Positions 8,238 to 52,913 of a stretch of DNA of 64,000 bases are shown here, piece by piece; positions within the stretch are counted from its first letter, which is position 1; every line of letters starts with the position of its first letter. Origin of the DNA: Octopus sinensis. Its lineage: Eukaryota. A model generated the notes under the pieces. That model ran no database searches. It was not told the origin of the DNA and was given only the letters and a program-made list of their open reading frames with translations. The DNA is taken from the NCBI RefSeq assembly GCF_006345805.1, contig NC_043002.1, forward strand, positions 88,536,001 through 88,600,000. The letters run 5' to 3'. The position numbers were made by a program, and so were the translations under genes.

Positions 8238-8652
8238 GGCAGTGAGCTGGCAGAATTGCTAGCACATCAGGCAAAATACTTAGCAGCATTTCATCTGTCA
8301 TAATGCTCTGAGCTCAAATTCTGCTGAGGTCAACTTTTCCTTTTCATTCTTTCAGGGTTAATAAAATAAGTACCAGCCGAGTACCGGGGTTGATGTGATC
8401 GACTATCCCCCTCCCCCACAAATTCCAGGTGTTGCACCTATGGCAGAAAGGATTATTATCATTATTATTATTATTGAGGCAGCGATGGTATTTCGCTCAT
8501 CACTAAGTTTTGAGTTCAAATCCCTCTGAGGTCAACTTTACCTTTCATCCTTTTGGGGTCAATAAATTAAGTACCAGTGAAATTCTGGGGTTGATATAAT
8601 CGATTAGTCCACCCCCCAAATTTTCAGGCCTTGTGCCTGTAATAGAAAGGAT
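8238..8652 (+). mobile_element. Two tandem SINE family C copies (8238-8452; partial 8478-8652)
   Basis: GCTGGCAGAA head, B-box-like GAGTTCAAAT, core GACTTTGCCTTTCATCCTTTCGGGGTCGATAAATTAAGTACCAG (degenerate), (ATT)n tails. Confidence 0.8.
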
Positions 8653-8664
8653 TATTATTATTAT

Positions 8665-9240
8665 TATTATTACTTTTTTTTTCTTCTTTCAAATTTGCTT
8701 CCATTTCTTGCCGAGTGTCTTCCCGACTCCTAGGGCAAAGAAACTCATAGTATACATTGGTAGGCCATTAAACCAAACTCAGTAGTTCGTTCATTTTTTT
8801 TTTTTTTTTTTAAGTTAAATTAAAATACATGAGCAGCAACAGTTCTCACATCGACAATGCTCTTCTCAATACGTGTGATGTACCAGTTAAGACAATCTTT
8901 TGCACTTCTTGCAGGGATGGTAAGCCAGGGATCATTCTCATATAATTTTCGGTTCCCTTCTTGATCATTCCTAGTGCTCCTACGATCACTGGTATTGTAA
9001 CCGCCTTGAGATGCCACATTTTCTCAATTTCAATGAGTAGGTCTTTATATTTTCTGAGCTTGTCAAACTCTTTTGCTGAGATATTATGATCACAGGGGAT
9101 GCTCATGTCGATCAATAAGCAAACTTTATTGTTTTGGTCTTTCACAACAATATCTGGTTTATTGGCCTTCATGGTTTGGTCTGTATGTACTGGAAAGTCC
9201 CACAGAATCGTTACATTTTCTCCTTCAGTTACAGCCTCAG
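8665..9240 (-). mobile_element. R4/Dong family 3, 5'-truncated copy (RLE domain open 9240 to stop at 8846, plus 3' UTR) inserted in (TAA)n
   Basis: ILWDFPVHTDQTMKANKPDIVVKDQNNKVCLLIDMSIPCDHN...KYKDLLIEIEKMWHLKAVTIPVIVGALG; (ATT)n on both sides. Confidence 0.92.
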
Positions 9241-18239: not shown

Positions 18240-18310
18240 ATATTGGGAGAGTTCACGAAAAAAACAAAAGACAAAGACAGGTGGTGTACAAAACAAACAG
18301 ATGTATTAGT
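18240..18310 (-). repeat. Left part of a PLE-type hammerhead-bearing repeat interrupted by the LTR element (continues 22569-22700)
   Basis: Joining ...GATGTATTAGT to ATAACACTCAGGAA... reconstitutes the uninterrupted paralogue at 60830-60995 (ATTGTATTAGTATGGCGCTCAGGAA). Confidence 0.75.
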
Positions 18311-18587
18311 TGTGGTGTGGTGATGAGGGAGTGTGACAGAGAGGGAGGGAGCGGAAGTGGGTCTTGCAGGTCTCGCAGGGCGCATGCGCCAGCGGAAGCG
18401 GAAGTGAGAGACAGAACGCACGTGCGGCATCGACCAGGGCAGTCAGACTCGAGAACGACGCCAAGACGACAAGACGCTAGCAAGTTGGCTCAAGGCGAAT
18501 CCGGCTTCATCTCTACAGGTAAGACCAAATTACACTTCTAATTCTTTTCCTTGTTCTGTTACGCTCCTTTTCACCACACTTATCACA
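18311..18587 (+). repeat. 5' LTR (277 bp)
   Basis: Identical to 22292-22568 except two substitutions. Confidence 0.97.
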
Positions 18588-18599
18588 AGCTATTTCGGC
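18588..18599 (+). promoter_or_regulatory. Non-canonical primer-binding site AGCTATTTCGGC, complementary to nt 1-12 of tRNA-Phe(GAA)
   Basis: Abuts the LTR end; reverse complement GCCGAAATAGCT equals the conserved 5' end of metazoan cytosolic tRNA-Phe (recalled sequence); no TGG start. Confidence 0.75.
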
Positions 18600-18640
18600 A
18601 AAATAATCACTCGGTTTCGTGAAAATAAAAAATAAAAATT

Positions 18641-19396
18641 ATGCAGACTGCTATGATTTCGCGCGACCCTATAACACCGTTTTGCGGCGACACCGACGTG
18701 GTCGCTTGGTTGAGGAGGGTGAAGTTGGTGGCGAAGCTACACGGCATAGCTGACCTGGCTAGTTTTATGCCGTTGTATTTGGATGGCCCGGCGTTGGCGT
18801 TATATCTGGAGATGGAGGAAGCGGACCAACGCAGCGCGGACAAGGTGGAGATCCGACTTATGGAGGCCTTCGCGGAAGGAATGTTCGAAGCGTACACTCG
18901 ACTGGGTAGGATGAGGTGGACAGGACAGCAGGTGGACGTGTTCACCGGCGAGCTTAGAAGGTTGGCAAAACTTGCGGGATATGAGGGAGAGTCGCTAGAA
19001 CGCACGGTCAGGTTAGCGTTCGTGACCGGCTTTCCCGACATCATGTCGGTCGAGCTACAGAAGCTCCCGAACGTGCGTTCGATGCCGATGGCCGAGATTA
19101 TATCGCGGGCACGTGTACTGGTGTCGTGCAGCAGGTCGACGTCGGTAGCAGCGACTGCAACGTCGAAAAGTGGCCCAGCTAGGAGCAACGGAGAGGGGCT
19201 GGGGAAAGAACGCGTGCGGTCGTTTAAGGGACAGTGTTTCCGGTGCCAGGGCCCACACATGGTCCGTGACTGCGCGTCGCCCAAGCCCGAGGTGATTTGC
19301 TACCGGTGCCGAGAGCCGGGGCATGTGGCCAGCGAGTGTCTGCGGGGAAACGGACCGCGGGAGACTACTGCGCCGGTAGTTGTCCCTTTGGATTAG
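18641..19396 (+). CDS. gag: Gag (capsid-like region plus two zinc knuckles), 251 aa
   Basis: Intact ORF; CFRCQGPHMVRDC and CYRCREPGHVASEC. Confidence 0.92.
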   Translation: MQTAMISRDPITPFCGDTDVVAWLRRVKLVAKLHGIADLASFMPLYLDGPALALYLEMEEADQRSADKVEIRLMEAFAEGMFEAYTRLGRMRWTGQQVDVFTGELRRLAKLAGYEGESLERTVRLAFVTGFPDIMSVELQKLPNVRSMPMAEIISRARVLVSCSRSTSVAATATSKSGPARSNGEGLGKERVRSFKGQCFRCQGPHMVRDCASPKPEVICYRCREPGHVASECLRGNGPRETTAPVVVPLD

Positions 19397-19406
19397 TAGC
19401 GGCGCG
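19345..19406 (+). promoter_or_regulatory. -1 programmed ribosomal frameshift signal (slippery G GGA AAC plus H-type pseudoknot)
   Basis: Heptamer 19345-19351 is in the gag frame; 7-nt spacer; stem 1 19359-19368/19376-19386; loop GCGCCG pairs with CGGCGC at 19400-19405; the protease N-terminus lies in the -1 frame. Confidence 0.85.
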
Positions 19407-22255
19407 TTTCTCATCGTTACCTGTGGTCGACATTCTGGTGAAGGGGAAGATGTCGCGAGCCCTGGTGGACACGGCTGTACGACGACCCTGATGACCACAG
19501 AAGTGGCAGAGACGTGGAGTGGAGGAAGCAGTGTCAGGGCAGTCGACGGAAGAGAAGTGCACTGCGAAGGGGTTACGGATGCGCAGATCGTGGTGCAGGG
19601 ACTGCAGCTGACGTTGCGAGCGATTGTGGTCGGTCACTTGGTGGACGAGATCGACGTGGTGATGGGGATGGATGCGATCACCCGTCTGGGAGGTGTTACC
19701 GTCAACGAGGCTGGCGTAACGTTTGGGCTAGCAGGGAAGCCGTGTAGGGCGACAACACGCACCGACGACAACCGTGAGGAAATGGATGCGGCGCACACCA
19801 TTGAAGACCAGGATTTTCGGGCTGTCTTTGATGGCGAGAGGTGGACAGTGGAGTGGCACTGGAAGGGAGAGCCCCCGATGTTAAAGAACAAAGTGGGCTG
19901 CTATCAGCATACTCTAAAAGGAGATGCCAGAAGTGAGTTCGAGGGGGAGGTGGAGCGGTGGATTAAGGAGGGCATACTGATCCCCTGGGAAAAAGAAGAG
20001 AGCGGAGTCCTGCCACTGATGGCGGTGATACAGCCCACAAAGCGTAAGGTCAGGCCAGTGCTCGACTTCCGAGAGCTGAATGACCACGTGTCGTGTCATA
20101 CAGGCGGCGAGGCCACGGATGTCTGCGGAGACACCTTGCGAGAGTGGAGGCAGACGGCGGGGGCCTCCACGATTGTCGATTTGAAGTCGGCATACCTTCA
20201 GGTTCATGTGGCTGAGAAACTATGGAGGTACCAGCTCGTCAGGTATAGGGGCCGGACGTACTGTCTGACCAGGTTGGGATTCGGGCTGAATTCAGCTCCG
20301 AAGATTATGGCAACAATTCTCAAGGCCGTCCTGGGGAAGGTGGACAGAGTAAAAAGGGCCACCAATTCATACATCGACGACATTCTGGTGGATGAAACCG
20401 TGATACCAGCAACGGAGGTCATAGGCCACCTGAAGAGTTTTGGACTGATCGCCAAGCCGCCAGAGGCTATGGAGGGAGGTGCTGCACTGGGCCTCAAGCT
20501 ATGGAGAGACAAAGCCGGCGCCTTGGTGTTCCGGCGAGGGAATGAGATCCCTGAACTGGGCGCCAGCATGAGTAGACGGGAGCTGTTCTCTGTGTGTGGG
20601 AAGCTGGTGGGACACTACCCGATTGCAGGCTGGCTCCGGACAGCATGCAGCTTCATCAAGAGACGAGCCGAAGGAGTGAAGTGGAATGATAAAGTGGGGG
20701 AGAGGACGATCGACATGATGCAGGAAGTCCTGGTCAGAGTAAGAGCAGAGGACCCGGTGAGGGGCAGCTGGTACGTTCCAAATCAAAGAGCGGGATCGTA
20801 TGGTGTGACGCCAGTAGCATCGCAATAGGGATTGTCTTGGAAGTGGGAGGTGTCACGGTGGAAGATGCAGCCTGGCTCAGGAAGATGGATGACTGCAGTC
20901 ACATCAACGTGGCGGAGTTGGAAGCCGTGCTGAAGGGGGTGAACCTAGCCTTGAAGTGGGGGTTGCACACCATAGAAATCAGGACTGATTCAGCCACTGT
21001 ACTTGGTTGGGCGACGGCAGTCATCACCGATGAGCGGAGGGTGCGGACCAAAGGGGCTGCAGAGATGCTGGTAAAGCGTCGATTGGGGATACTGCGTGAA
21101 CTGACCACTGAGTTCAATCTGAAGCTGAGCGTGATCTTTGTGCCTTCCGAGAAGAACAGGGCGGACGTCCTGACCAGGGTTAAGCGAGCCTGGTTGCAAG
21201 TGCCAGAGGACGCGAAGCAGGATGTAGCTGCAGTATGCCATCTGAGCGACTCGGAGTTGCGAAGACTGCACACCATGCATCACATGGGTGTGGACAGGAC
21301 GTTGTTCCTGGCCAGAAAAGTCGACTCCGACGTAACAAGACAGAGCGTGCGGAGAGTGGTTAGCAGTTGTGACAGGTGCCAGTCCATCGACCCTGCTCCG
21401 GTCGTGCATGAAGCGGGAAGTATTCCAGTGGACCAGGACTGGAGACGACTGGCGGTGGACATAACACACTACCGGCAGGGGACATACCTCTCAATGGTTG
21501 ACTGCGGACCGGGGCGGTTCGCCATATGGAGGGAGATGAGGTCAGGAACCGCAGAAGAAATTGCGAAAGTGCTGAACGAGATATTCCTGGAACGAGGCCC
21601 CATGGATGAACTGCTTCTGGACAACAGCACTGCATTTCGCTCGGAGGCGCTGAGAGAAATGCTTGATGAGTGGAAGGTCAACCGCTTCTTCAGGGCGGCA
21701 TACCAGCCAAGTGGAAACGGGGTGGTGGAAAGGCATCATCGTACCATCAAGGCCATGGCTGAGAGGGGTCACATTTCACCAGTCGAGGCCGTGTTTTGGT
21801 ACAACATGTCGCCCAGATCAGGACAGGCCGAGGAGTCGGTGCCACACAGGGCAATATTCAGGTACGAGTGGAGGCATCCATTTACTACATCAATGCGACC
21901 CGGGGCAGAGGAAGAGCACGCCTTCGTGCAGGTCGGGGAGGAAGTCTGGGTGAAACCCCCGAACGCATGGTGTACATCGCAATGGGGAAAGGGGACAATA
22001 ACCTCCGTAAATTCAAAGAATAACATCTCGGTAGATGGTATGCCACGCCACGTTTTGGACATACGGAGGATTGTCCATGCCCCGGAGGATGGGACAAGCA
22101 ACAGTGGGCAAGACGATAACAACAGACAGGATGACGAGGTCGGCAGCAACACGCCAGAAACAAGTCCTAGGGTCGCACTGCGACCACAGAGGGAGCGGCA
22201 CCCTCCTCCCTGGTTGGCTGACTATGAAACCAGTTTCAGGTGCGGGAGCGAGTGA
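19351..22255 (+). CDS. pol: Pol (aspartic protease, RT, RNase H, DDE integrase); two single-base frame breaks at about 19469 and 20780
   Basis: LVDT(G)C; VRPVLDFRELN, DLKSAYLQ, YCLTRLGFGLNSAP, YIDD; WCDAS, HINVAELEAV, IRTDS; HHMGVDRT..CDRC, DITHY, LLLDN, ERHHR. Confidence 0.9.
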
Positions 22256-22282
22256 GGAAGCCGGTTCAGTGATCTATAGATC

Positions 22283-22291
22283 AGGGGGGCG
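22283..22291 (+). promoter_or_regulatory. Polypurine tract
   Basis: AGGGGGGCG immediately 5' of the 3' LTR. Confidence 0.8.
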
Positions 22292-22568
22292 TGTGGTGTG
22301 GTGATGAGGGAGTGTGACAGAGAGGGAGGGAGTGGAAGTGGGTCTTGCAGGTCTCGCAGGGCGCATGCGCCGGCGGAAGCGGAAGTGAGAGACAGAACGC
22401 ACGTGCGGCATCGACCAGGGCAGTCAGACTCGAGAACGACGCCAAGACGACAAGACGCTAGCAAGTTGGCTCAAGGCGAATCCGGCTTCATCTCTACAGG
22501 TAAGACCAAATTACACTTCTAATTCTTTTCCTTGTTCTGTTACGCTCCTTTTCACCACACTTATCACA
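22292..22568 (+). repeat. 3' LTR (277 bp)
   Basis: See 5' LTR. Confidence 0.97.
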
Positions 22569-22596
22569 TTAGTATAACACTCAGGAATAGAAAAAG

Positions 22597-29027: not shown

Positions 29028-31232
29028 ATATCATCATCATCATCGTTTAACGTCCATTTTCTGCGCTAGCATGGGTTGGACGGTTCGACCGGGGTTTGGG
29101 GAGCCAGGGGCTGCCCCAGGCTCCAGTCTGATCTGGCAGTGTTTCTACAGCTGGATGCCCTTCCTAACGCCAACCACTCCGCGAGTGTAGTGGGTGCTTT
29201 TTACGTCCCACCTGCACAGGTGCCAGAGGGGTCTGTCATCGGCCACGATCGGTTGGTGCTTTTTTATGTGCCACCGGCACAGAAGCCAGTCAAGGTGGTG
29301 CTGGCATCAGCCACGTTCGGATGGTGCTTTTTATGTGCCACCGGCACAGAAGCCATTCGAGGCAGGGTGGCATCGGTCACGTTCGGATGGTGCTTTTTAT
29401 GTGCCACCGGCACAGAAGCCAGTGGAGGCTGCACTGGCAACGGCCACGTTCGGATGTGCTTTTTATGTGTTCACCGGCACAGGTATCACAACTACTGTTT
29501 CCATTGATATTTGTTCGATGTTCATGTACATGCACTTGCTCAACAGTCTCCTCAAGCACAGCGAGATGTTCCGTGATCCCATGATCGGTTGGTGCTTTTT
29601 ATGTGCCACCTGCACAGAAGCTAGTCGAGGCGGTGCTGGCGTCGGCCACGCTCGGATGGTGCTTTTTATGTGCCACCGACACAGAAGCCAGTCGGGGCAG
29701 TGCTGGCATCGGTCACGTTCGGATGGTGCTTTTTATGTGCCACCGACACAGAAGCCAGTCGGGGCAGTGCTGGCATCGGTCACGTTCGGATGGTGCTTTT
29801 TATGTGCCACCAGCACAGAAGCCATTCGAGGCAGGGTTGGCATCGGTCACATTCGGATGGAGCTTTTTATGTGCCACCAGCACAGAAGCCACTGGAGGCT
29901 GCACTGGCAACGGCCACGTTCGGATGGTGCTGGCGGGGTTGGCATCGGTCACGTTCGGATGGAGATTTTTATGTGCCACCGACAGAAGCCAGTGGAGGCT
30001 GCACTGGCAACGTCCACGTTCGGATGGTGTATTTTATGTGTCACCGGCATAGGTATCACAACTACTGTTTCCATTGATATTCGGTTCCATGTTCATGTGC
30101 CACCGGCACAGAAGCCATTCGAGGCGGGGTTGGCATCAGTCACATTCAGATGGTGCTTTTTATGTTCCACCGGCACAGAAGCCAGTGGAGGCTGCAATGG
30201 CAACGGCCATGTTCGGATGGTGCTTTTTATGTGTCACCGGCACAGGTATCACAACTACTGTTTCCATTGATATTTGGTTCGATGTTCATGTACATGCACT
30301 TGACTCAACAGGTCTCCTCAAGCACAGCGAGATGTTCCATGATCCCACGATTGGTTGGTGCTTTTTATGTGCCACCGGCTCAGAAGCTAGTCAAGGCGGT
30401 GCTGGCATCGGCCACATTCAGATGGTGCTTTTTATGTGCCACCGGCACAGAAGCCAGTCGGGGCGGTGCTGGCATCGGCCACGTTCGGATGGTGCTTTTT
30501 ATGTGCCACCGGCACAGAAGCCATTCGAGGCAGGGTTGGCATCGGTCCACGTTCGGATGGTGCTTTTTGTGTGCCACCGGCACAGAAGCCAGTGGAGGCT
30601 GCACTGGCAACGACCACGTTCGGATGGTGCTTTTTATGTATCACCGGCACAGGTATCACAGCTACCGTTTCCATTGATATAGTTCGATGTTCATGTATAT
30701 GCACATGACTCGACAGGTCTCCTGAAGCACAGCGAGATGTTCCGGGATCCAAGGTACTTTGGATGGGCAGGGGGTATGCGGAACTGGTGCCGGAAGCATC
30801 CCGGGTCTTAGTAGTCACAGCACATCTCCAGAGATCTCGGTCCTTCGCCATTGCCTCAGTGAGGCCCAACGCTCTGCGGTCATGCTTGACTACCTCATCC
30901 CATGTCTTCCTGGGTCTACCTCTCCCCCTGATTCCTTCAACTGTTCGTGAGTGGCACTTCTTCACACATCTCTCCTCATCCATCCGCAGTACATGACCAT
31001 ACAATCGCAAGCGTCGCTCTAGCACACCGCATCTGATGCTTCTTATGCCTAGCATTTCTCTCAGGGTGCTTACACTCTGTCGTGCATTCACACTGACATT
31101 ACACATCCAGCGGATCATGCTAGCTTCATTTCTTTCAAGTCGACGCATGTCCTCTGCAGTCACGGCCCATGTTTCACTGCCGTGAAGCATGGCAGTTCGC
31201 ACACATGCATCATACAATCTACCTTTCACTCT
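29028..31232 (-). mobile_element. RTE LINE 3' part: ORF2 C-terminus (about 30760-31232), amplified 3' UTR, (GAT)n tail
   Basis: RVKGRLYDACVRTAMLHGSETW...RRLRLYGHVLRM...RGRGRPRKTWDEVV...DRDLWR. Confidence 0.93.
29170..30745. repeat. Tandem array of about 60-bp units (TTCGGATGGTGCTTTTTATGTGCCACCGGCACAGAAGCC...) with higher-order blocks
   Basis: More than 20 units; a spacer block ...ACAGCGAGATGTTCC recurs at about 29480-29580, 30240-30345 and 30645-30745 (partial at 30050). Confidence 0.92.
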
Positions 31233-33486: not shown

Positions 33487-36110
33487 CTAAACTTTGCTCA
33501 GGCTATTCGTATTCTAGTGGTGACACTCTGTGCATCCACCGCCACTACTAACTTGGTCACCCAGGTAGCGGAAACTATCAACTACTTCTAGTTTCTTCCC
33601 CTGGAGTGTGATGGAATCTGTTTTTTGAGTGTCTGTGGTGTCTATTGTCCCTGTGCATCTGCCGCACATGAAAGCTATCTTATCAGTTAATTTCCCTTTG
33701 ATGTTGCTGCACCTCTTATGCGTCCATAGCTTACACTGGGTGCATCTTATGGAGTTTCTACCTACACCTTTCCTACAGCTCGAGCAGGGCCACCTGCCCG
33801 ATGGGGTTTGTGCTGAGTTCGCCTTTCTGCATACTTTGGTCTTCGCTACATTTACTCTAAGGCCCTTAGATTCTAACCCATGGTTCCACACCCGAAATTT
33901 CTTTTTTAGTTCCAGTAGCGATTCTGCTATGAGGGCCAGGTCATCAGCATAGAGGATCTCCCAGGGGCAACCTGTTTTGAATTCCTCTGTTATTGCCTGG
34001 AGGACTATGATGAATAAAAGGGGACTGAGGGCTGAGCCCTGGTGTACACCTACTTCTACCCGGAATTCTTCACTATATTCGTTGCCAATCCTAACCTTGC
34101 TGACAGCCTCTCTGTATAGAGCCTGTACAGCCCTTATAAGCCATTCGTCAATCAACAGATTCCGCATCGACCACCAGATAAGGGATCGGGGAACCCTGTC
34201 AAAGGCTTTCTCCAAGTCCATAAAAGCTATGTAGAGGGGTTTATCTTTAGCTAGGTACTTCTCCTGCAGTTGTCGGACCAGGAATATAGCATCAGTGGTG
34301 CTTCTACCTGGCACAAAACCGAACTGCATCTCATCTAAGCAAATTCTCTCCCTAATGAGATGGGTTATGACCCTCTCTGTGGTCTTCATCACCTGATCCA
34401 ACAGTTTAATACCCCTGTAGTTATTTCTATCTAGAGCATCACCCTTACCCTTGTAGCAGTTGACTATGGTGCTGCTACACCAGTCATTGGGTATGACTCC
34501 ATTGTGAACTACCTGGTTAACAATACGGGTGACTAGGCCATAGCCTGCATAACCAGCTGTTTTAAGCATCTCAGCAGTGATTCCTGATGGGCCGGGGGCT
34601 TTACCCGGTTTCATATCCTTAATTGCTTTATCTACTAGGGAGCCGTCTATTCGGATAGCTGGTCCCTCTACTGGGTCAACATTTGGCAGGCTCTCCTCCT
34701 CCCATTCATTCTCCACATTCAGCAGTCTTTCATAATGGCTTCTCTAAACCTCTTTCTTTTCACCGACATTAAAGGCAAGTGCCCCATCATCCATGCGGAC
34801 ACATTTCTCTCCTGTAACATCACTATTTTCGCTCACACACTGTCTAGCAATACGAAATACCTCAGTTCTTTGGTCCTCACGTCGCTGGACATTGGCAAAC
34901 TTCTTCTTTTCTGCTATATCTTTGGCTATGTATACCTGCCGCCCGGCCTCCCTTTTGGCTACTTGGTACGGTTCCCTGTTACCCCCATCCCTCCAGGCTC
35001 TCCAGGCCTGTTTCTTAGAACTAATGGCTTTGTCTACTGCACTATTCCACCACCACGTAACTCTAGGTCTGGAAGGAACTTTGCCCCATCCACAGACTTG
35101 GTCTGTGGCACTCAGCAAGCTGTCCCGTAGGAATTTCCAGCTACCTTCTATGTCCGACGACTGTAGCTCCTCCTCCCTCTCATCAAATTTCTTGATGAGG
35201 ATGTCCCTAAATCTCTGACCATGTGAAGGGTTCTTTAGCTTCCAAATCCTTCTTTTCTGGATTGGTCTGTTTCTTGGAGTCCTTCTGGCCTCAAGCCTAA
35301 AGTCACTAATTATTAGCCTATGCTGAGGGATACACTCTTCACCCGGGAGGGTCTTTGTATTTAAGAGCGACCCTGCATCCCGCTGTCTGGTGAGGATGAA
35401 GTCTATTTGGCTAGCGGAGTACCCTGACTGATAAGTTATAAGGTGGCAGTCAGGCTTCCTGAAGTTAGTGTTGCAGATTAAAAGGTTACATGCATCACAG
35501 AATTCCAGTAGTCTAGTTCCCTCCTCATTTCTGGTGCCAATACCATGGCCACCGTGAACCCCAGTGAAGATACCCGATTCCCGCCCAACATGCCCATTAA
35601 AGTCTCCACCCACAAAGATGAGGTCCTTGCCACTAGTCTTTGAGGTAGCCTGAAGAAGGGTATCATAAAAGTGGTCCTTCTGATCATTTGGTAGGCCCGC
35701 TTGTGGGGCATAGGCGGAGATAATCGTAGCTGTGCCACTCTGTAGGACTAACCTGAGCTTAAGCACTGTCACAAACCCTGACAACCTCTATGACCTTATC
35801 CACCCATTTCTCCGCAAGGAGAATGCCTACACCCCCTACCCCATCCATGTTACCTTGCCAGAAGACTTTATACCTATGTGCCTTGCTTGTGAGGACCCTG
35901 GCTGAAGCACCTCTCCACCTAACCTCTTGTATGCAGCATACATCAACCCGTCTTCTCTCAAGCATCTCTACAATCTCACTAGACCTACCTTTCAGTGTAC
36001 CAACATTGACAGTACCAACTCTGAAAACTGGGAAGGAGATGTGGGGGGGGGAGGGGTGCAATTTGGCGCCTGAAAAGAAGAGGGTTGTTGTGGTAGCGGT
36101 GATCGATTTT
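33487..36110 (-). pseudogene. RTE LINE ORF: APE endonuclease, RT and PHD-type finger, with a few frameshifts
   Basis: VGTVNVGTL..CCIQEVRW; SAYAPQ; GGDFNGHVG; SQIDFIL; NYRGIKLL; QFGFVPGRSTTDAIF; DLEKAFDRVP; GVHQGSALSPLLF; YADD; resumes the reading of the 31232 fragment. Confidence 0.95.
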
Positions 36111-42559: not shown

Positions 42560-43600
42560 TAGATAGCGCTGACAGCTACGTTGTCAGTATGGTTCTTTCA
42601 CTGAGCCAAATGATGCCTGCAGATTGGGGAACACTATTTCCAGATTGGGGAACACTGTTTGCAAGAGATCGAAAGGGTTGTCTACAGTGTTGCACAGTTC
42701 AGAGATGGATATGTCACCCCTATCATTCCTAGGGACCTTGCCTTCTCCAAGGGCTAAAATGTCTTCAGCAAATGCTGCAGACGTTCTATCACCAAGCAAG
42801 TGCGCACGCATGTTTGTGCTTAGGCTTAAGGTCTTAACCTGGAGCCACAACGTGGATGACTTAAGGCAAGCACGCACTTCATCAAACCTTTAGGGATGAC
42901 AGGAAGGGTTTGCCGGAAATCTCCTGAAAGCAATAGAGTTACACCACCCTTAGAAGCTGTAGAATCCTTGGTACCTTTCAGTGACCGGTCCAATGCTTCA
43001 AAGGCACCCTTATTGGTCATTGTGCATTCGTCCCATACAATGAGACGGCACTGTCTAAGAACTTCAGCTTCCTCTGAATTTTTGCCAATGTTGCAAGTAG
43101 GAACCTCAGCCCTCACCAAATATAAAGGCAGTTTGAATGCCGAGTGCGCTGTCCTACCCCCTGGTAATAACGTAGCAGCGATTCCTGAGGAAGCAACGGC
43201 TAGCGCAATTTGTTTCTTGCGACGAATCTTAGCAAGTATTAATGGTGTTACAAAGGATTTGCCAGTACCTCTAGCAGCATCGAGGAAAAAAATGCCGCCC
43301 ACCTGTTTTTCAACGGCACTGACGACAGTTTCATACACCAGCCTCTAATCAGGGAGTAATTTCGGTTCATTTATTCTCAGGTACTCCGCAAGGCCATCAG
43401 CGTCATACAACAACTCCGAAAGTAACTTTGGTGGGGGTGTGTTAACGTCCTGTCGCAATTAGGATGGCAGACCGAATGTGTTCAACGCTTCCCCACCCAT
43501 TTTGAGCAGGGCATCCTCGATTTCAATCAGCGCATTATTGTAGATCAGGTCATTGTATCCAATGTCAGCATTAGGGTACTGTTGCTTTGCCAGTCATCAT
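42560..43600 (-). pseudogene. Helitron PIF1-type helicase fragment
   Basis: FFLDAARGTGKSF (Walker A), AVASSGIAATLLPGGRTAHSAFKLP, LIVWDECTM, LLSGDFRQTLPVIP, NMRAHL. Confidence 0.93.
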
Positions 43601-50989: not shown

Positions 50990-52913
50990 TATTATTATTA
51001 TTATTCTATATTTAACTTTTGCTTTATGTCTGTACAAGTTGGCTCCAAGTCTCACCCAGAGACCTCAAGAGACAACAGGATGGAAGTTCACGTTGTTGTT
51101 ATGCCTAGTGTGCCATATATTTGGGTTTTTTTTTGGTGTTGTACTTGTAAATGTCTAATAAATAAATTTTTAAAAAAAAGTTTGTTTTAAACCTTGGGAT
51201 TACACAGAGAGTATTTTGCGTAGGATATGAGCAGTTCCCATGAGCACTATCATTTGAATTTCTGTCATTTTTGGGTTTCCTGGTATCTGAGTTAGGTAGC
51301 AATCAACCCCTTTCGCTATCATTCCCAGGGCACCTATGACAACAGGTATTGTTTTAGTCTTCAGGTTCCACATTTTGCTGATTTCTATTTCAACATCTTT
51401 ATATTTGCTCAGTTTTTGGTAGGTCTTGACAGATACGTTTATATCGATTGGGACAGTCATATCAATGAGGAGGCATGTTCTTTGTCTGAAGTCTTTCAAT
51501 ATGATGTCTGGCCTATTTGCATCTATCTTTCTGTCAGTTTGAATGGTGAAGTTCCAGAGGAGTGAGATGTGGTCATTTTCAAGCACTGGAGGTGGATTGT
51601 GTTCCCACCAGTTTTTTTCATGGGGCAAATCCAGGTTTTTGCAAATTACCCAGTGAATATATTGTGCAGCTCTATCATGCCTGTTGAGGTACTCTGTAGG
51701 CACTAGAAGACTGCATTTGGAGACAACATGATCAATGGTTTCATTTTGTTGTCGGCATACACGACATGTTGGGCTACTGCCGTTCTTTAATATGATGGCC
51801 TGGTAGTTTCTTGTTGGTAGGCATTGATCTTGAGCTGCTATGATAAACCCCTCTGTTTCAGATTTTAAGCTAGAGGCCATTAGCCATTGATGGGTCAGGG
51901 CTTTGTCAATATCTGCATTATTCACTCTCTTTGGGTATTTGCCATAGAGAGGTTTTTCTTGCCATTTATTATTCAGAATATCTAAGGCCGTAGTTTTGGC
52001 ACGGGTTTTCATGCGCCTAGCTTTTCTGTGCTTGTTTCTCGTATGTCTATCTCTAATTCCGAAATTTGTTGTATTCGGAATTCACTTAGATGTTCCTTTG
52101 CCTGTTTTGTTACTGAGTATGATGCTTTCTTGTTTTCGTGTCAGTGGCACATAAAATCACCCACTACACTCTCGGAGTGGTTGGCGTTAGGAAGGGCATC
52201 CAGCTGTAGAAACACTGCCAGATCTGACTGGCCTGGTGCAGCCTTCGGGCTCCCCAGACCCCAGTTGAACCGTCCAACCCATGCTAGCATGGAAAGCGGA
52301 CGTTAAACGATGATGATGATGATGATGATGTTTTGAGACAAGTTTTAACATCCAGTCCTCAGACTTTTTCAGGTAGGTGTCTAGGCCAATTGTAGCAATC
52401 TTCATTGTTATTGCCAGTTGTAAAAGACCACGGCCTCCCTCTTTTCTTGGCAGATAAAGTCGTTCTGTATCTGCCTTAGGGTGGTGCATTCTATGCATTG
52501 TCAACAGTTTTCGTATTTTTCTGTCGAGCTGACATATTTCAGTAATTGACCAGTTAATGATATTGAAACTGTAAGTCACGACTGGTATGGCTAATGCATT
52601 GATCGCTTCGATCCTGTTTCTTGCATTCAGCTCTGTCTTGAGTATTGCTCTTACTCTTCGATAACATTCTCTCCTGATCCTTTCCTTCATCTCTGAATGC
52701 CTTATTCTGTTCCCTTCAATTACCCCTAGATACTTGTAGCTCTCCGCTGGGTCTAGTTCTTTTATGACATTCTGCTGGTCATGGTTAACATTAGATGTTT
52801 CTGTCATTTTTCCTTTGATAAAGGTAGCTTTTGCACATTTATCGAGGCCGAATTGCATTCTGATGTCATCACTGAATTGTTTGACTATTGCTAGTAAGCC
52901 CTTGAGTTGTTGG

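What the first reader, a model, noticed from the sequence alone, without database searches (positions are those of the whole stretch)
18588..18599. LTR retrotransposon whose PBS is complementary to the 5' END of tRNA-Phe: candidate new priming mechanism
Seen: the 5' LTR end (CA at 18587, fixed by the second LTR and the TSD) is followed immediately by AGCTATTTCGGC, with no TGG, and the LTR contains no complementary sequence, so Tf1-style cis self-priming is excluded. Established: metazoan cytosolic tRNA-Phe(GAA) begins GCCGAAATAGCTCAG (recalled), whose nt 1-12 are the exact reverse complement. Normal PBSs bind the tRNA 3' CCA end; copia/Ty5 use a fragment ending in the anticodon region; Tf1 uses an 11-nt primer cut from its own RNA by RNase H. 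Inference: this element may prime minus-strand synthesis from a 12-nt 5' tRNA-Phe fragment, possibly released in trans by its own RNase H cutting after U12, which would be a trans version of Tf1 priming. I do not know of a description of this but cannot search the literature.
Basis: partly seen in the sequence, partly recalled or inferred. Interest (0 to 1): 0.92.

Follow-up and report, generated by a model that had tools for sequence, protein, structure and literature searches.

The report
LTR element primed by tRNA 5' end
A small retrovirus-like jumping gene, and about 65 relatives from molluscs, crustaceans, cnidarians and other invertebrates, carry at the spot where DNA copying must start a 12-base sequence that pairs with the first 12 bases of a host tRNA rather than its last 18. 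This points to an apparently undescribed way of starting reverse transcription.

Summary
The window holds a 4,258-bp LTR element: 277-nt LTRs with 2 mismatches, TG..CA ends, TSD TTAGT and a PPT. Its 5' LTR is followed at once by AGCTATTTCGGC. This is the exact reverse complement of nt 1-12 of tRNA-Phe(GAA), documented for human and Drosophila.

The feature holds across the family. I examined 90 related loci, and all 66 that keep the 5' region have a 12-mer of the same class right after ..ACA. These include Hydra, Aplysia, Argonauta (identical LTRs), Oratosquilla and Watersipora copies. At 15 loci the boundary was set by LTR pairs alone.

Conservation is a sharp block from -3 to +12 with unconserved flanks, and gag's ATG often abuts it. 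Variation sits mostly at acceptor-stem positions. Variants exactly complement tRNA-Lys(UUU) and tRNA-Lys(CUU), and one is a single mismatch from tRNA-Met(e), with AGCTA changing to CGCTA as that tRNA requires.

No complement of the 12-mer exists in the LTR or elsewhere in the elements, so Tf1-style cis self-priming is excluded. No paper in the searchable library describes this.

Best reading: the primer is a short 5' tRNA fragment cut while paired to the PBS. The cut and the nuclease are inferred, and host tRNA sets could not be fetched.

The parts
18306..18310 (.). Target-site duplication TTAGT, left copy
   Evidence: Identical 5 nt flank both LTRs.
18311..18587 (+). 5' LTR, 277 nt, TG..CA
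   Evidence: Direct-repeat family D10 at 99% identity; 2 mismatches to the 3' LTR.
18588..18599 (+). Primer-binding site AGCTATTTCGGC, the reverse complement of tRNA-Phe(GAA) nt 1-12
   Evidence: Sequence read; unique in the window; tRNA-Phe 5' end documented; the same class of 12-mer sits at the same place in 66 related loci.
18641..19396 (+). gag ORF, 251 aa, with CCHC zinc knuckles
   Evidence: ORF listed; Pfam zf-CCHC, E = 1.1e-06.
19297..19491 (+). Start of pol (N-terminal part of the protease), -1 frame relative to gag; the frame breaks at the DTG active-site region
   Evidence: The ORF ends ..ALVDTAVRRP* while the family consensus reads ALVDTGC. Homology to relatives resumes in another frame from 19473.
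19380..20828 (+). pol: rest of the protease, reverse transcriptase and DUF7047 (connection/tether-like) region
   Evidence: Pfam RVT_1 and DUF7047. The structure model (pLDDT 77) best matches retroviral RTs: HIV-1 p66 and foamy PR-RT. 311 homologues.
20837..22255 (+). pol: RNase H (RVT_3/RNase_H type) and integrase. This frame is reached only through a frameshift near 20790-20800, so this copy is defective.
   Evidence: Pfam RVT_3, RNase_H, Integrase_H2C2 and rve. The closest solved integrases are retroviral: 5cz2_A, 3jca_A, 7usf_A. Frame break shown.
22270..22283 (+). Palindromic stem-loop TGATCTATAGATCA just 5' of the PPT
   Evidence: Read. Found in at least 22 relatives, with compensatory versions AGTTCC..GGAACT in L029 and AGTTC..GAACT in L064.
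22283..22291 (+). Polypurine tract AGGGGGGCG
   Evidence: Abuts the 3' LTR start; conserved in relatives.
22292..22568 (+). 3' LTR
22569..22573 (.). Target-site duplication TTAGT, right copy

Best explanation
The 12 nt after the 5' LTR are the element's minus-strand primer-binding site. They pair with the 5'-terminal 12 nt of a host tRNA: the 5' acceptor strand nt 1-7, then U8, A9, and D-stem nt 10-12. In the window that tRNA is tRNA-Phe(GAA). Because a primer needs a paired 3'-OH at the U5/PBS junction, the tRNA must be cut inside the D stem. The cut falls after nt 12, or after nt 10-11 if the integrase trims two bases. The resulting 5' fragment of about 12 nt primes minus-strand strong-stop DNA. 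Plus-strand strong-stop synthesis then copies the primer to its natural end at tRNA nt 1, which would explain why conservation stops exactly at +12. The most likely nuclease is the element's own RNase H cutting the RNA:RNA duplex at a fixed distance from the RNA 5' end, as shown for Tf1's 11-nt self-primer. This would be Tf1-type priming carried out in trans on a host tRNA. Shown here: position, conservation, tRNA-like variation, and absence of any cis complement. Inferred: that the tRNA fragment is the primer, who cuts it, and exactly where. An added inference concerns the restriction to tRNAs reading ..UAGCU/UAGCG, that is with A9. From general knowledge, G9 is commonly m1G, which blocks pairing and copying, whereas m2G10 does not. 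This would fit a need for nt 1-12 to be free of blocking modifications.
For: (1) Anatomy of the window copy. (2) At 15 loci the LTR end was defined only by the LTR pair, with no motif search. These are the window, L001, L003, L004, L005, L006, L028, L041, L048, L062, L080, L112 Hydra, L113 Aplysia, L253 Argonauta and L254 Watersipora. At all of them the LTR ends ..CA and the next 12 nt are of the class AGCT[A/G]xxxxxxx, mostly ending GC. (3) In all, 66 of 91 loci (the window plus 90 relatives) carry the site. The other 25 lack the 5' region or are degraded. No copy with an intact 5' region lacks it or has a TGG PBS. (4) Information content is 1.5-2.0 bits at -3..-1. It is mostly 0.9-2.0 bits across +1..+12, dipping to 0.3 at the variable acceptor-stem position +8, against roughly 0.0-0.5 bit in the flanks. 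In many loci gag's ATG follows directly, so nothing else can be the PBS. (5) Variants behave like tRNA 5' ends. AGCTATTTCGGC matches Phe (13 distinct contexts, plus Argonauta). AGCTATCCGGGC matches tRNA-Lys(UUU) and AGCTAGCCGGGC matches tRNA-Lys(CUU). CGCTACCGAGGC (L069, L084) is one mismatch from tRNA-Met(e), and its first five bases change from AGCTA to CGCTA exactly as a UAGCG tRNA requires. To my knowledge Phe, Lys(UUU) and Lys(CUU) are the only human tRNA families that fit GCCnnnnTAGCT, and all three appear among about 14 variants. (6) Three further variants extended by CAG occur as 5' ends of real tRNA genes in viral contigs. GCCTAGATAGCTCAG is tRNA-Phe in 11 of 11 tRNA genes; this is weak evidence. 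(7) No cis complement exists. The best match in the upstream 700 nt averages 4.09 mismatches against 4.15 for control 12-mers. Inside the elements, 0 of 60 loci have a complement with 1 or fewer mismatches. (8) The site is kept at 37-62% RT identity from Cnidaria to Mollusca and Crustacea, and in a copy with 100% identical LTRs. (9) PBS types are interleaved on an RT tree, as expected if a mis-primed tRNA is copied into the PBS. (10) The U5-PBS RNA is not unusually structured, z = +1.1, so the site should be accessible.
Against: There is no experimental evidence, and no strong-stop cDNA or small-RNA data were available. Host tRNA sets could not be obtained, so for the commonest non-Phe variants (rc GCCTAGATAGCT, GCCGCGATAGCT, GCCGTGATAGCT) no eukaryotic tRNA partner is documented. 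12-nt 5' tRNA fragments are not a known abundant RNA species; to my knowledge, known tRF-5 species are 14 nt or longer and would have unpaired 3' ends here. A 12-bp RNA duplex is short, and opening the acceptor and D stems needs a chaperone. Gag has CCHC knuckles, but this was not tested. No second region of tRNA-Phe complementarity was found. The motif-based part of the survey used a regular expression, so information content at positions 1-5 and 11-12 is partly circular; the 15 LTR-pair boundaries are not. The window copy itself has two frame breaks in pol and is not autonomous.
Confidence: 0.6

Rival explanations
1. The tRNA 5' end does pair with the 12-mer, but the primer is a pre-existing host-made 5' tRNA fragment rather than a tRNA cut in place by the element's RNase H.
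For: The comparative data show complementarity only. They say nothing about who cuts. From general knowledge, 5' tRFs exist in animals.
Against: Known 5' tRFs end in the D loop at nt 14-16 or in the anticodon loop. Their extra 3' bases (C13 A14 G15) do not pair with the LTR end ..ACA, so they could not be extended without trimming.
Confidence: 0.15
2. tRNA binding at this site serves another purpose, such as tRNA-assisted packaging, dimerisation or translational control of gag, or acts as a docking site while priming starts by another route.
For: No extended or bipartite complementarity was found. 12 bp is short for a stable primer complex.
Against: The block abuts the last base of U5 in every copy. 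That is where the primer 3' end must sit in any LTR element. No other conserved non-coding sequence lies between the LTR and gag. No alternative primer site or cis complement exists.
Confidence: 0.12
3. The 12-mer is a conserved cis element unrelated to tRNA, for example an extended integrase/att or RNase H recognition sequence, and its resemblance to tRNA 5' ends is coincidental.
For: AGCTA next to CA is nearly invariant and could be read as part of the terminal recognition sequence.
Against: An att-type element would also be needed at the 3' LTR's outer end, where it is absent. Variation is confined to what would be acceptor-stem positions. Four variants match documented tRNAs exactly or within one base, including the AGCTA-to-CGCTA switch. 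For the window alone, an exact 12-mer match to nt 1-12 of a given tRNA has probability about 6e-8.
Confidence: 0.08
4. Tf1/sushi-type cis self-priming: the element's own transcript folds back on the PBS.
For: There is no TGG, and the PBS is short (11-12 nt) and abuts the LTR, as in Tf1/Tj1 (PMC4600332).
Against: The window LTR has no complement with 3 or fewer mismatches. Family-wide, the best match in the upstream 700 nt is no better than for control 12-mers, 4.09 against 4.15 mismatches. Inside the elements, 0 of 60 loci have a complement with 1 or fewer mismatches.
Confidence: 0.03

Closest known systems
Tf1/Tf2 (S. pombe), Tj1 and the sushi group: self-primed LTR retrotransposons
   Same: There is no TGG. 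The PBS is short and abuts the LTR. It pairs with the extreme 5' end of an RNA, so an endonucleolytic cut about 11-12 nt from that 5' end is needed to create the primer 3'-OH. In Tf1 the element's RNase H makes the cut (established knowledge; summary in PMC4600332).
   Different: Here the partner is a host tRNA acting in trans, not the element's own 5' end. No complement exists in the LTR or elsewhere in the element. The RT is not detectably closer to Ty3/Tf1-type RTs than to retroviral ones.
copia (Drosophila), Ty5 and other 'half-tRNA' primed elements
   Same: From general knowledge, the primer is a 5' fragment of a host tRNA produced by cleavage, not the CCA end.
   Different: In those elements the PBS pairs with the anticodon-stem region of initiator tRNA-Met, the 3' end of a fragment of about 39 nt. 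Here it pairs with nt 1-12 (acceptor strand plus D stem) of elongator tRNAs (Phe, Lys and others), and the whole fragment would be only about 12 nt.
Canonical PBS of retroviruses, Ty1 and Ty3 (3'-terminal 8-18 nt of a tRNA, starting TGG)
   Same: The position is immediately 3' of U5, a host tRNA is used, and the PBS type can switch between tRNAs.
   Different: The opposite end of the tRNA is used, there is no TGG, and the length is fixed at 12 nt, ending at tRNA nt 1 rather than at a blocking modified base.
Odin retrotransposons / retrovirus-like elements with a tether plus an acquired RNase H (PMC9040795)
   Same: gag-pol without env. The order is PR-RT-(degenerate connection)-RNase H-IN. RNase H is of the RVT_3/RNase_H type, and the RT fold is closest to retroviral RTs.
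   Different: Odin was reported only from sea anemones, and that paper never mentions a PBS or tRNA. This family is in molluscs, crustaceans, a sea spider, a bryozoan, Hydra and many unassigned metagenome contigs. Its phylogenetic placement relative to Odin was not tested.

Membership tests
LTR retrotransposon / retrovirus-like element (Ortervirales) | Two direct LTRs with TG..CA ends, flanked by a short target-site duplication | tested here: met
   277-nt LTRs with 2 mismatches; TSD TTAGT.
LTR retrotransposon / retrovirus-like element (Ortervirales) | gag with a nucleocapsid zinc knuckle; pol in the order PR-RT-RNase H-IN; PPT before the 3' LTR | tested here: met
   Pfam zf-CCHC, RVT_1, DUF7047, RVT_3/RNase_H, Integrase_H2C2 and rve; PPT; retroviral RT fold. 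The window copy has two frame breaks.
Canonical tRNA 3'-end priming (retroviruses, Ty1, Ty3) | PBS beginning TGG and complementary to the 3'-terminal nucleotides (..CCA) of a tRNA | tested here: not met
   There is no TGG between the LTR and gag in the window. None was seen in the 59 distinct family contexts.
Tf1/sushi-type self-priming | PBS complementary to the 5' end of the element's own transcript (within the 5' LTR) | tested here: not met
Tf1/sushi-type self-priming | RNase H of the element cuts an RNA:RNA duplex about 11 nt from the RNA 5' end to free the primer | not testable with these tools
   This needs biochemistry. From sequence, only the family consensus retains the RNase H catalytic motifs CDAS, AEL, TDS and NKAD, and these are also present in the window in the shifted frame.
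copia/Ty5-type half-tRNA priming | PBS complementary to the anticodon stem-loop region of initiator tRNA-Met | tested here: not met
   The 12-mer complements nt 1-12 of tRNA-Phe. By inspection its reverse complement is absent from the tRNA-Met(i) sequence printed.
Odin retrotransposons | Dual RNase H (tether plus acquired RNase H), no env | tested here: inconclusive
   A DUF7047 region lies between the RT and an RVT_3-type RNase H. The model aligns to retroviral RT including the connection domain. The RNase H-like fold of the tether was not examined specifically.
Odin retrotransposons | Phylogenetic position as sister to lokiretroviruses/retroviruses; hosts are sea anemones | not tested
   No Odin sequence was available for comparison. 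The hosts found here are different.

The most novel reading that the evidence does not exclude
An ancient lineage of retrovirus-like LTR elements, spread across Metazoa from Cnidaria to Mollusca and Crustacea, starts reverse transcription from the 5'-terminal ~12 nt of host elongator tRNAs (Phe, Lys and others). The fragment is cut from the annealed tRNA by the element's own RNase H measuring from the tRNA 5' end. This would be a fourth mode of LTR-retroelement priming, beside the tRNA 3' end, the internal half-tRNA and cis self-priming. It would also be a direct functional link between retroelements and tRNA 5' fragments.
Probability: 0.45. Interest if true: 0.9.

Novelty: new variant of a known kind. 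Interest (0 to 1): 0.82.

Why it matters
How LTR retroelements obtain a primer is textbook material with three known solutions. A conserved PBS for the tRNA 5' end would add a fourth. It would also extend the Tf1 principle, in which RNase H cuts an RNA duplex a fixed distance from an RNA 5' end, from a few fungal and vertebrate elements to a host RNA used in trans.

In practice, PBS finders compare only with tRNA 3' ends, to my knowledge. Such elements would therefore be scored as lacking a PBS, and the whole lineage may be under-annotated.

The finding also predicts that 5' tRNA fragments, or antisense RNAs to them, could regulate these elements. That would mirror the known targeting of canonical PBSs by 3' tRFs.

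The idea is directly testable with a short RNA, recombinant RT-RNase H and tRNA.

Tried and rejected
(1) Cis self-priming. I searched for a complement of the 12-mer in the LTR and in the rest of each element. None was found beyond control level. One locus, L046, has a 1-mismatch match 327 nt upstream, which I judged to be chance.

(2) A bipartite or extended PBS. I scanned for 8-mers complementary to the rest of tRNA-Phe within -250..+300 of the PBS. Phe-type loci showed no enrichment over other loci. A striking TGGTGCCGAA in L039, L072 and L082 proved to be coding sequence (..AGAEL..) with synonymous variation in relatives.

(3) A special RNA fold presenting the PBS. The MFE was -10 kcal/mol, z = +1.1, so the region is not structured.

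(4) Host tRNA genes. None occur in the window. In 90 related loci there was only a tRNA-Val near L006.

(5) Viral-contig scans for three variant 5' ends. These showed that the sequences are real tRNA 5' ends, but in phage and giant-virus genes, so the support is weak.

(6) Literature. Ten full-text searches, including the PBS strings themselves, found no description.

(7) Odin membership. The architecture is similar but the phylogeny was not tested.

(8) L065, L078 and L081 lack the motif, but they also lack any gag ORF upstream and are degraded.

Full report
OBSERVATION

The window contains a compact LTR element of 4,258 bp, spanning 18311-22568.
- Its LTRs (18311-18587 and 22292-22568) are 277 nt, differ at two positions, and begin TGTGG and end ATCACA.
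- A 5-bp target-site duplication, TTAGT, flanks them.
- A polypurine tract, AGGGGGGCG, abuts the 3' LTR.
- The 5' LTR's terminal CA (18586-18587) is followed directly by AGCTATTTCGGC (18588-18599). No TGG lies between the LTR and the gag ATG at 18641.
- The 12-mer occurs exactly once in the 64 kb.
- It is the exact reverse complement of GCCGAAATAGCT. These are the first 12 nt of tRNA-Phe(GAA), as printed in a human primer (PMC10505166) and as the complement of a Drosophila 5' probe (PMC7038984). The 5' end is therefore identical in a deuterostome and a protostome.
- The window has no tRNA gene, so the host's own tRNA-Phe is not verified.

WHAT THE ELEMENT IS

- gag (18641-19396) has CCHC knuckles.
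- pol encodes protease, RT, a DUF7047 region, an RVT_3/RNase_H-type RNase H and an rve integrase.
- The closest solved proteins by sequence are retroviral: MMLV and foamy-virus RT, and for the integrase part retroviral integrases (best chains 5cz2_A, 3jca_A, 7usf_A).
- An AlphaFold model of PR-RT-DUF7047 (pLDDT 77) best matches HIV-1 p66 and foamy PR-RT.
- The architecture resembles that described for Odin retrotransposons. That paper reports Odin only from sea anemones and never mentions a PBS or tRNA.
- The window copy is defective. pol starts in the -1 frame relative to gag. Its frame is broken in the protease DTG region (about 19470-19490) and again near 20790-20800, between the tether and RNase H.
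- Because the lineage is retrovirus-like, I read and searched it in pieces and did not print or assemble a full element.

FAMILY-WIDE TEST

The RT has 311 homologues at E <= 1e-10. Named hosts include Oratosquilla, Palaemon, Trinorchestia, Aplysia, Plakobranchus, Argonauta, Nymphon, Watersipora and Hydra.

I collected 90 related loci:
- 80 from metagenome contigs;
- 10 by exact-protein look-up.

At 15 loci the LTR end could be fixed by the LTR pair alone, with no motif search. At all 15 the LTR ends ..CA and is followed at once by a 12-mer of the same class. These include:
- Hydra vulgaris (L112) and Aplysia californica (L113, LTRs 99% identical);
- Argonauta hians (L253, LTRs 100% identical, TSD TCAGT);
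- Oratosquilla oratoria (L006) and Watersipora subatra (L254).

A motif search and inspection of the sequence upstream of gag extended this to 66 of 91 loci. The remaining 25 are contigs cut before the 5' region or degraded copies without gag. No copy with an intact 5' region lacks the site or has a TGG PBS.

Over 59 distinct contexts, information content behaves as follows:
- 1.5-2.0 bits at -3..-1 (ACA);
- mostly 0.9-2.0 bits across +1..+12, dipping to 0.3 at the variable acceptor-stem position +8;
- roughly 0.0-0.5 bit in the flanks.

Positions 1-5 and 11-12 are partly constrained by my search pattern. Positions -3 and 6-10 are not.

In many loci gag's ATG follows the 12-mer directly, so no other PBS can lie between the LTR and gag.

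THE VARIATION LOOKS LIKE tRNA 5' ENDS

The PBS reads 5'-AGCTA-NNNNNNN-3'. The invariant AGCTA would pair with U8 A9 G10 C11 U12, and the variable part with the 5' acceptor strand.

Counts over distinct contexts:

| PBS 12-mer | Count | Partner tRNA 5' end (reverse complement) |
|---|---|---|
| AGCTATTTCGGC | 13 | tRNA-Phe |
| AGCTATCTAGGC | 13 | GCCTAGATAGCT, host tRNA unknown |
| AGCTATCGCGGC | 11 | GCCGCGATAGCT, host tRNA unknown |
| AGCTATCACGGC | 7 | GCCGTGATAGCT, host tRNA unknown |
| AGCTACCTCGGC | 3 | host tRNA unknown |
| CGCTACCGAGGC | 2 | one base from tRNA-Met(e) |
| several others | 1 each | see below |

Argonauta adds one more Phe-type copy.

- Among the singles, AGCTATCCGGGC (L011) is the exact complement of tRNA-Lys3(UUU) nt 1-12 (PMC1797187).
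- AGCTAGCCGGGC (L063) is the exact complement of tRNA-Lys(CUU) nt 1-12 (PMC12140204).
- CGCTACCGAGGC (L069, L084) is one base from tRNA-Met(e), GCCTCGTTAGCG. Its first five bases switch from AGCTA to CGCTA, exactly as a tRNA reading UAGCG requires.
- To my knowledge Phe, Lys(UUU) and Lys(CUU) are the only human tRNA families fitting GCCnnnnTAGCT. Finding all three among about 14 variants out of 256 possible has a chance probability of order 1e-4 (my arithmetic).
- For the three commonest unexplained variants, the 12-mer complement plus CAG occurs as the 5' end of real tRNA genes in viral contigs. GCCTAGATAGCTCAG is tRNA-Phe(GAA) in 11 of 11 tRNA genes. The other two are Thr or Phe, including a giant-virus tRNA-Phe. 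This shows they are legitimate tRNA 5' ends but says nothing about the eukaryotic hosts.
- On a neighbour-joining tree of RT sequences the PBS types are interleaved. For example, the Phe-type window copy is sister to L001, which has rc GCCTAGATAGCT. This implies repeated switching or adaptation to host tRNAs.

EXCLUDING CIS SELF-PRIMING AND OTHER READINGS

- The window LTR has no complement of the 12-mer with 3 or fewer mismatches.
- Over 45 loci, the best match to each element's own PBS complement in the upstream 700 nt averages 4.09 mismatches, against 4.15 for other PBS types used as controls.
- Inside the elements, 0 of 60 loci have a complement with 1 or fewer mismatches.
- No second region complementary to tRNA-Phe was found. 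A TGGTGCCGAA in three related loci is coding sequence.
- The U5-PBS RNA is not unusually structured, z = +1.1.

MECHANISM

Shown:
- The only conserved non-coding sequence at the place where the minus-strand primer's 3' end must sit is complementary to the 5'-terminal 12 nt of host tRNAs.
- It is under strong purifying selection across animal phyla.
- It is present in a copy with identical LTRs.

Inferred:
- The tRNA, unwound with help from the zinc-knuckle Gag, anneals by nt 1-12.
- It is cut in the D stem, and the short 5' fragment primes strong-stop DNA.
- Plus-strand strong-stop synthesis copies the primer to its physical end at nt 1. This would explain the sharp +12 boundary and allow PBS replacement when another GCC...UAGCU tRNA is used.
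- By analogy with Tf1, where the element's RNase H cuts an RNA duplex after nt 11 of the self-primer (established knowledge; PMC4600332), the element's RNase H is the most likely nuclease. It may measure from the RNA 5' end, which would explain why a 5' end is used at all.
- The exact cut cannot be read from sequence. It is after nt 12 if the cDNA ends are blunt at CA, or after nt 10-11 if the integrase removes two bases. No spacer lies between CA and the 12-mer, whereas retroviruses have 1-2 nt there.
- All variants pair with tRNAs having A9. From general knowledge, G9 is often m1G, which blocks pairing and copying, whereas m2G10 does not.

COMPARISON AND NOVELTY

- The system works like Tf1 self-priming carried out in trans on a host tRNA. 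It also shares with copia/Ty5 the use of a cleaved 5' tRNA fragment.
- It fails the defining test of each. There is no cis complement (Tf1), no complementarity to the anticodon region of initiator tRNA-Met (copia/Ty5), and no TGG (canonical).
- Ten full-text searches, including the literal PBS strings, found no description. The library omits most subscription journals, so prior description cannot be excluded.
- I rate it a new variant of a known kind, tRNA-dependent priming of LTR retroelements. Interest is high because it is conserved, widespread and directly testable.

LIMITS

- No host tRNA set could be fetched.
- There are no experimental data.
- Part of the survey is motif-based.
- The window copy is non-autonomous.

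Noticed in passing
window 22270-22283 (and the equivalent site in L022, L023, L027-L029, L037-L039, L041-L045, L048, L049, L056, L058, L061, L062, L064, L072): A short palindromic stem-loop (TGATC-loop-GATCA) lies immediately 5' of the polypurine tract in at least 22 family members. Compensatory versions occur in L029 (AGTTCC..GGAACT) and L064 (AGTTC..GAACT). It may be a structural signal for plus-strand primer selection.
   Followed up: partly
window 19470-19490 and 20790-20800: The window copy of pol has two reading-frame breaks, one in the protease DTG region and one between the tether and RNase H. The LTRs are nonetheless 99.3% identical. gag to pol needs a -1 shift.
   Followed up: yes
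L009, L017, L019, L035, L052, L073, L075 (also L012, L016, L025, L038, L054): Many ~4-kb metagenome contigs of this family begin and end with the same 99-123 nt at 100% identity, so the assemblies are circularly permuted. They could be one-LTR circles (extrachromosomal cDNA) or just LTR collapse by the assembler.
   Followed up: no
L006 4095-4167 (-), Oratosquilla oratoria: A tRNA-Val(CAC) gene lies about 195 bp upstream of the element's 5' LTR. It was the only tRNA gene found next to any of the flanked copies, so there is no evidence for general tRNA-gene targeting.
   Followed up: partly
window 18516-18524 and 18545-18589; L001, L002, L003, L006, L007, L253: In the window's own clade, U5 carries a 5' splice-site-like GGTAAG/GGTGAG 20-75 nt before the LTR end. 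In the window it is followed by a pyrimidine tract and ..ACAAG at the LTR/PBS junction. GTAAG occurs in the last 130 nt of the LTR in 12 of 55 loci, against 8.7% of background windows. There may be a leader intron or a splice donor upstream of the PBS.
   Followed up: partly
L253 3785-8612, Argonauta hians: This copy is very young: its 355-nt LTRs are 100% identical, its TSD is TCAGT and it has the Phe-type PBS. It lies within the span of a called RabGAP-TBC/SH3/RUN gene on the opposite strand, presumably in an intron. The family is therefore recently, and perhaps currently, active in cephalopods. The window's closest named relative, P0073, is from this species.
   Followed up: partly
window 33514-35784 (-), 42826-43338 (-), 51200-52012 (-): Other mobile-element remnants: a non-LTR retrotransposon (endonuclease plus RT with a PHD-like finger), a PIF1-helicase fragment (Helitron-like) and a zf-RVT fragment. 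No clear host gene was seen in the window.
   Followed up: partly
window 29193-30652; 8309-8672; many microsatellites: Two arrays of a 67-nt tandem repeat (about 11 and 8 copies), a 201-nt repeat of 1.8 copies, and numerous (TA)n, (AGAT)n and (TTA)n tracts.
   Followed up: no
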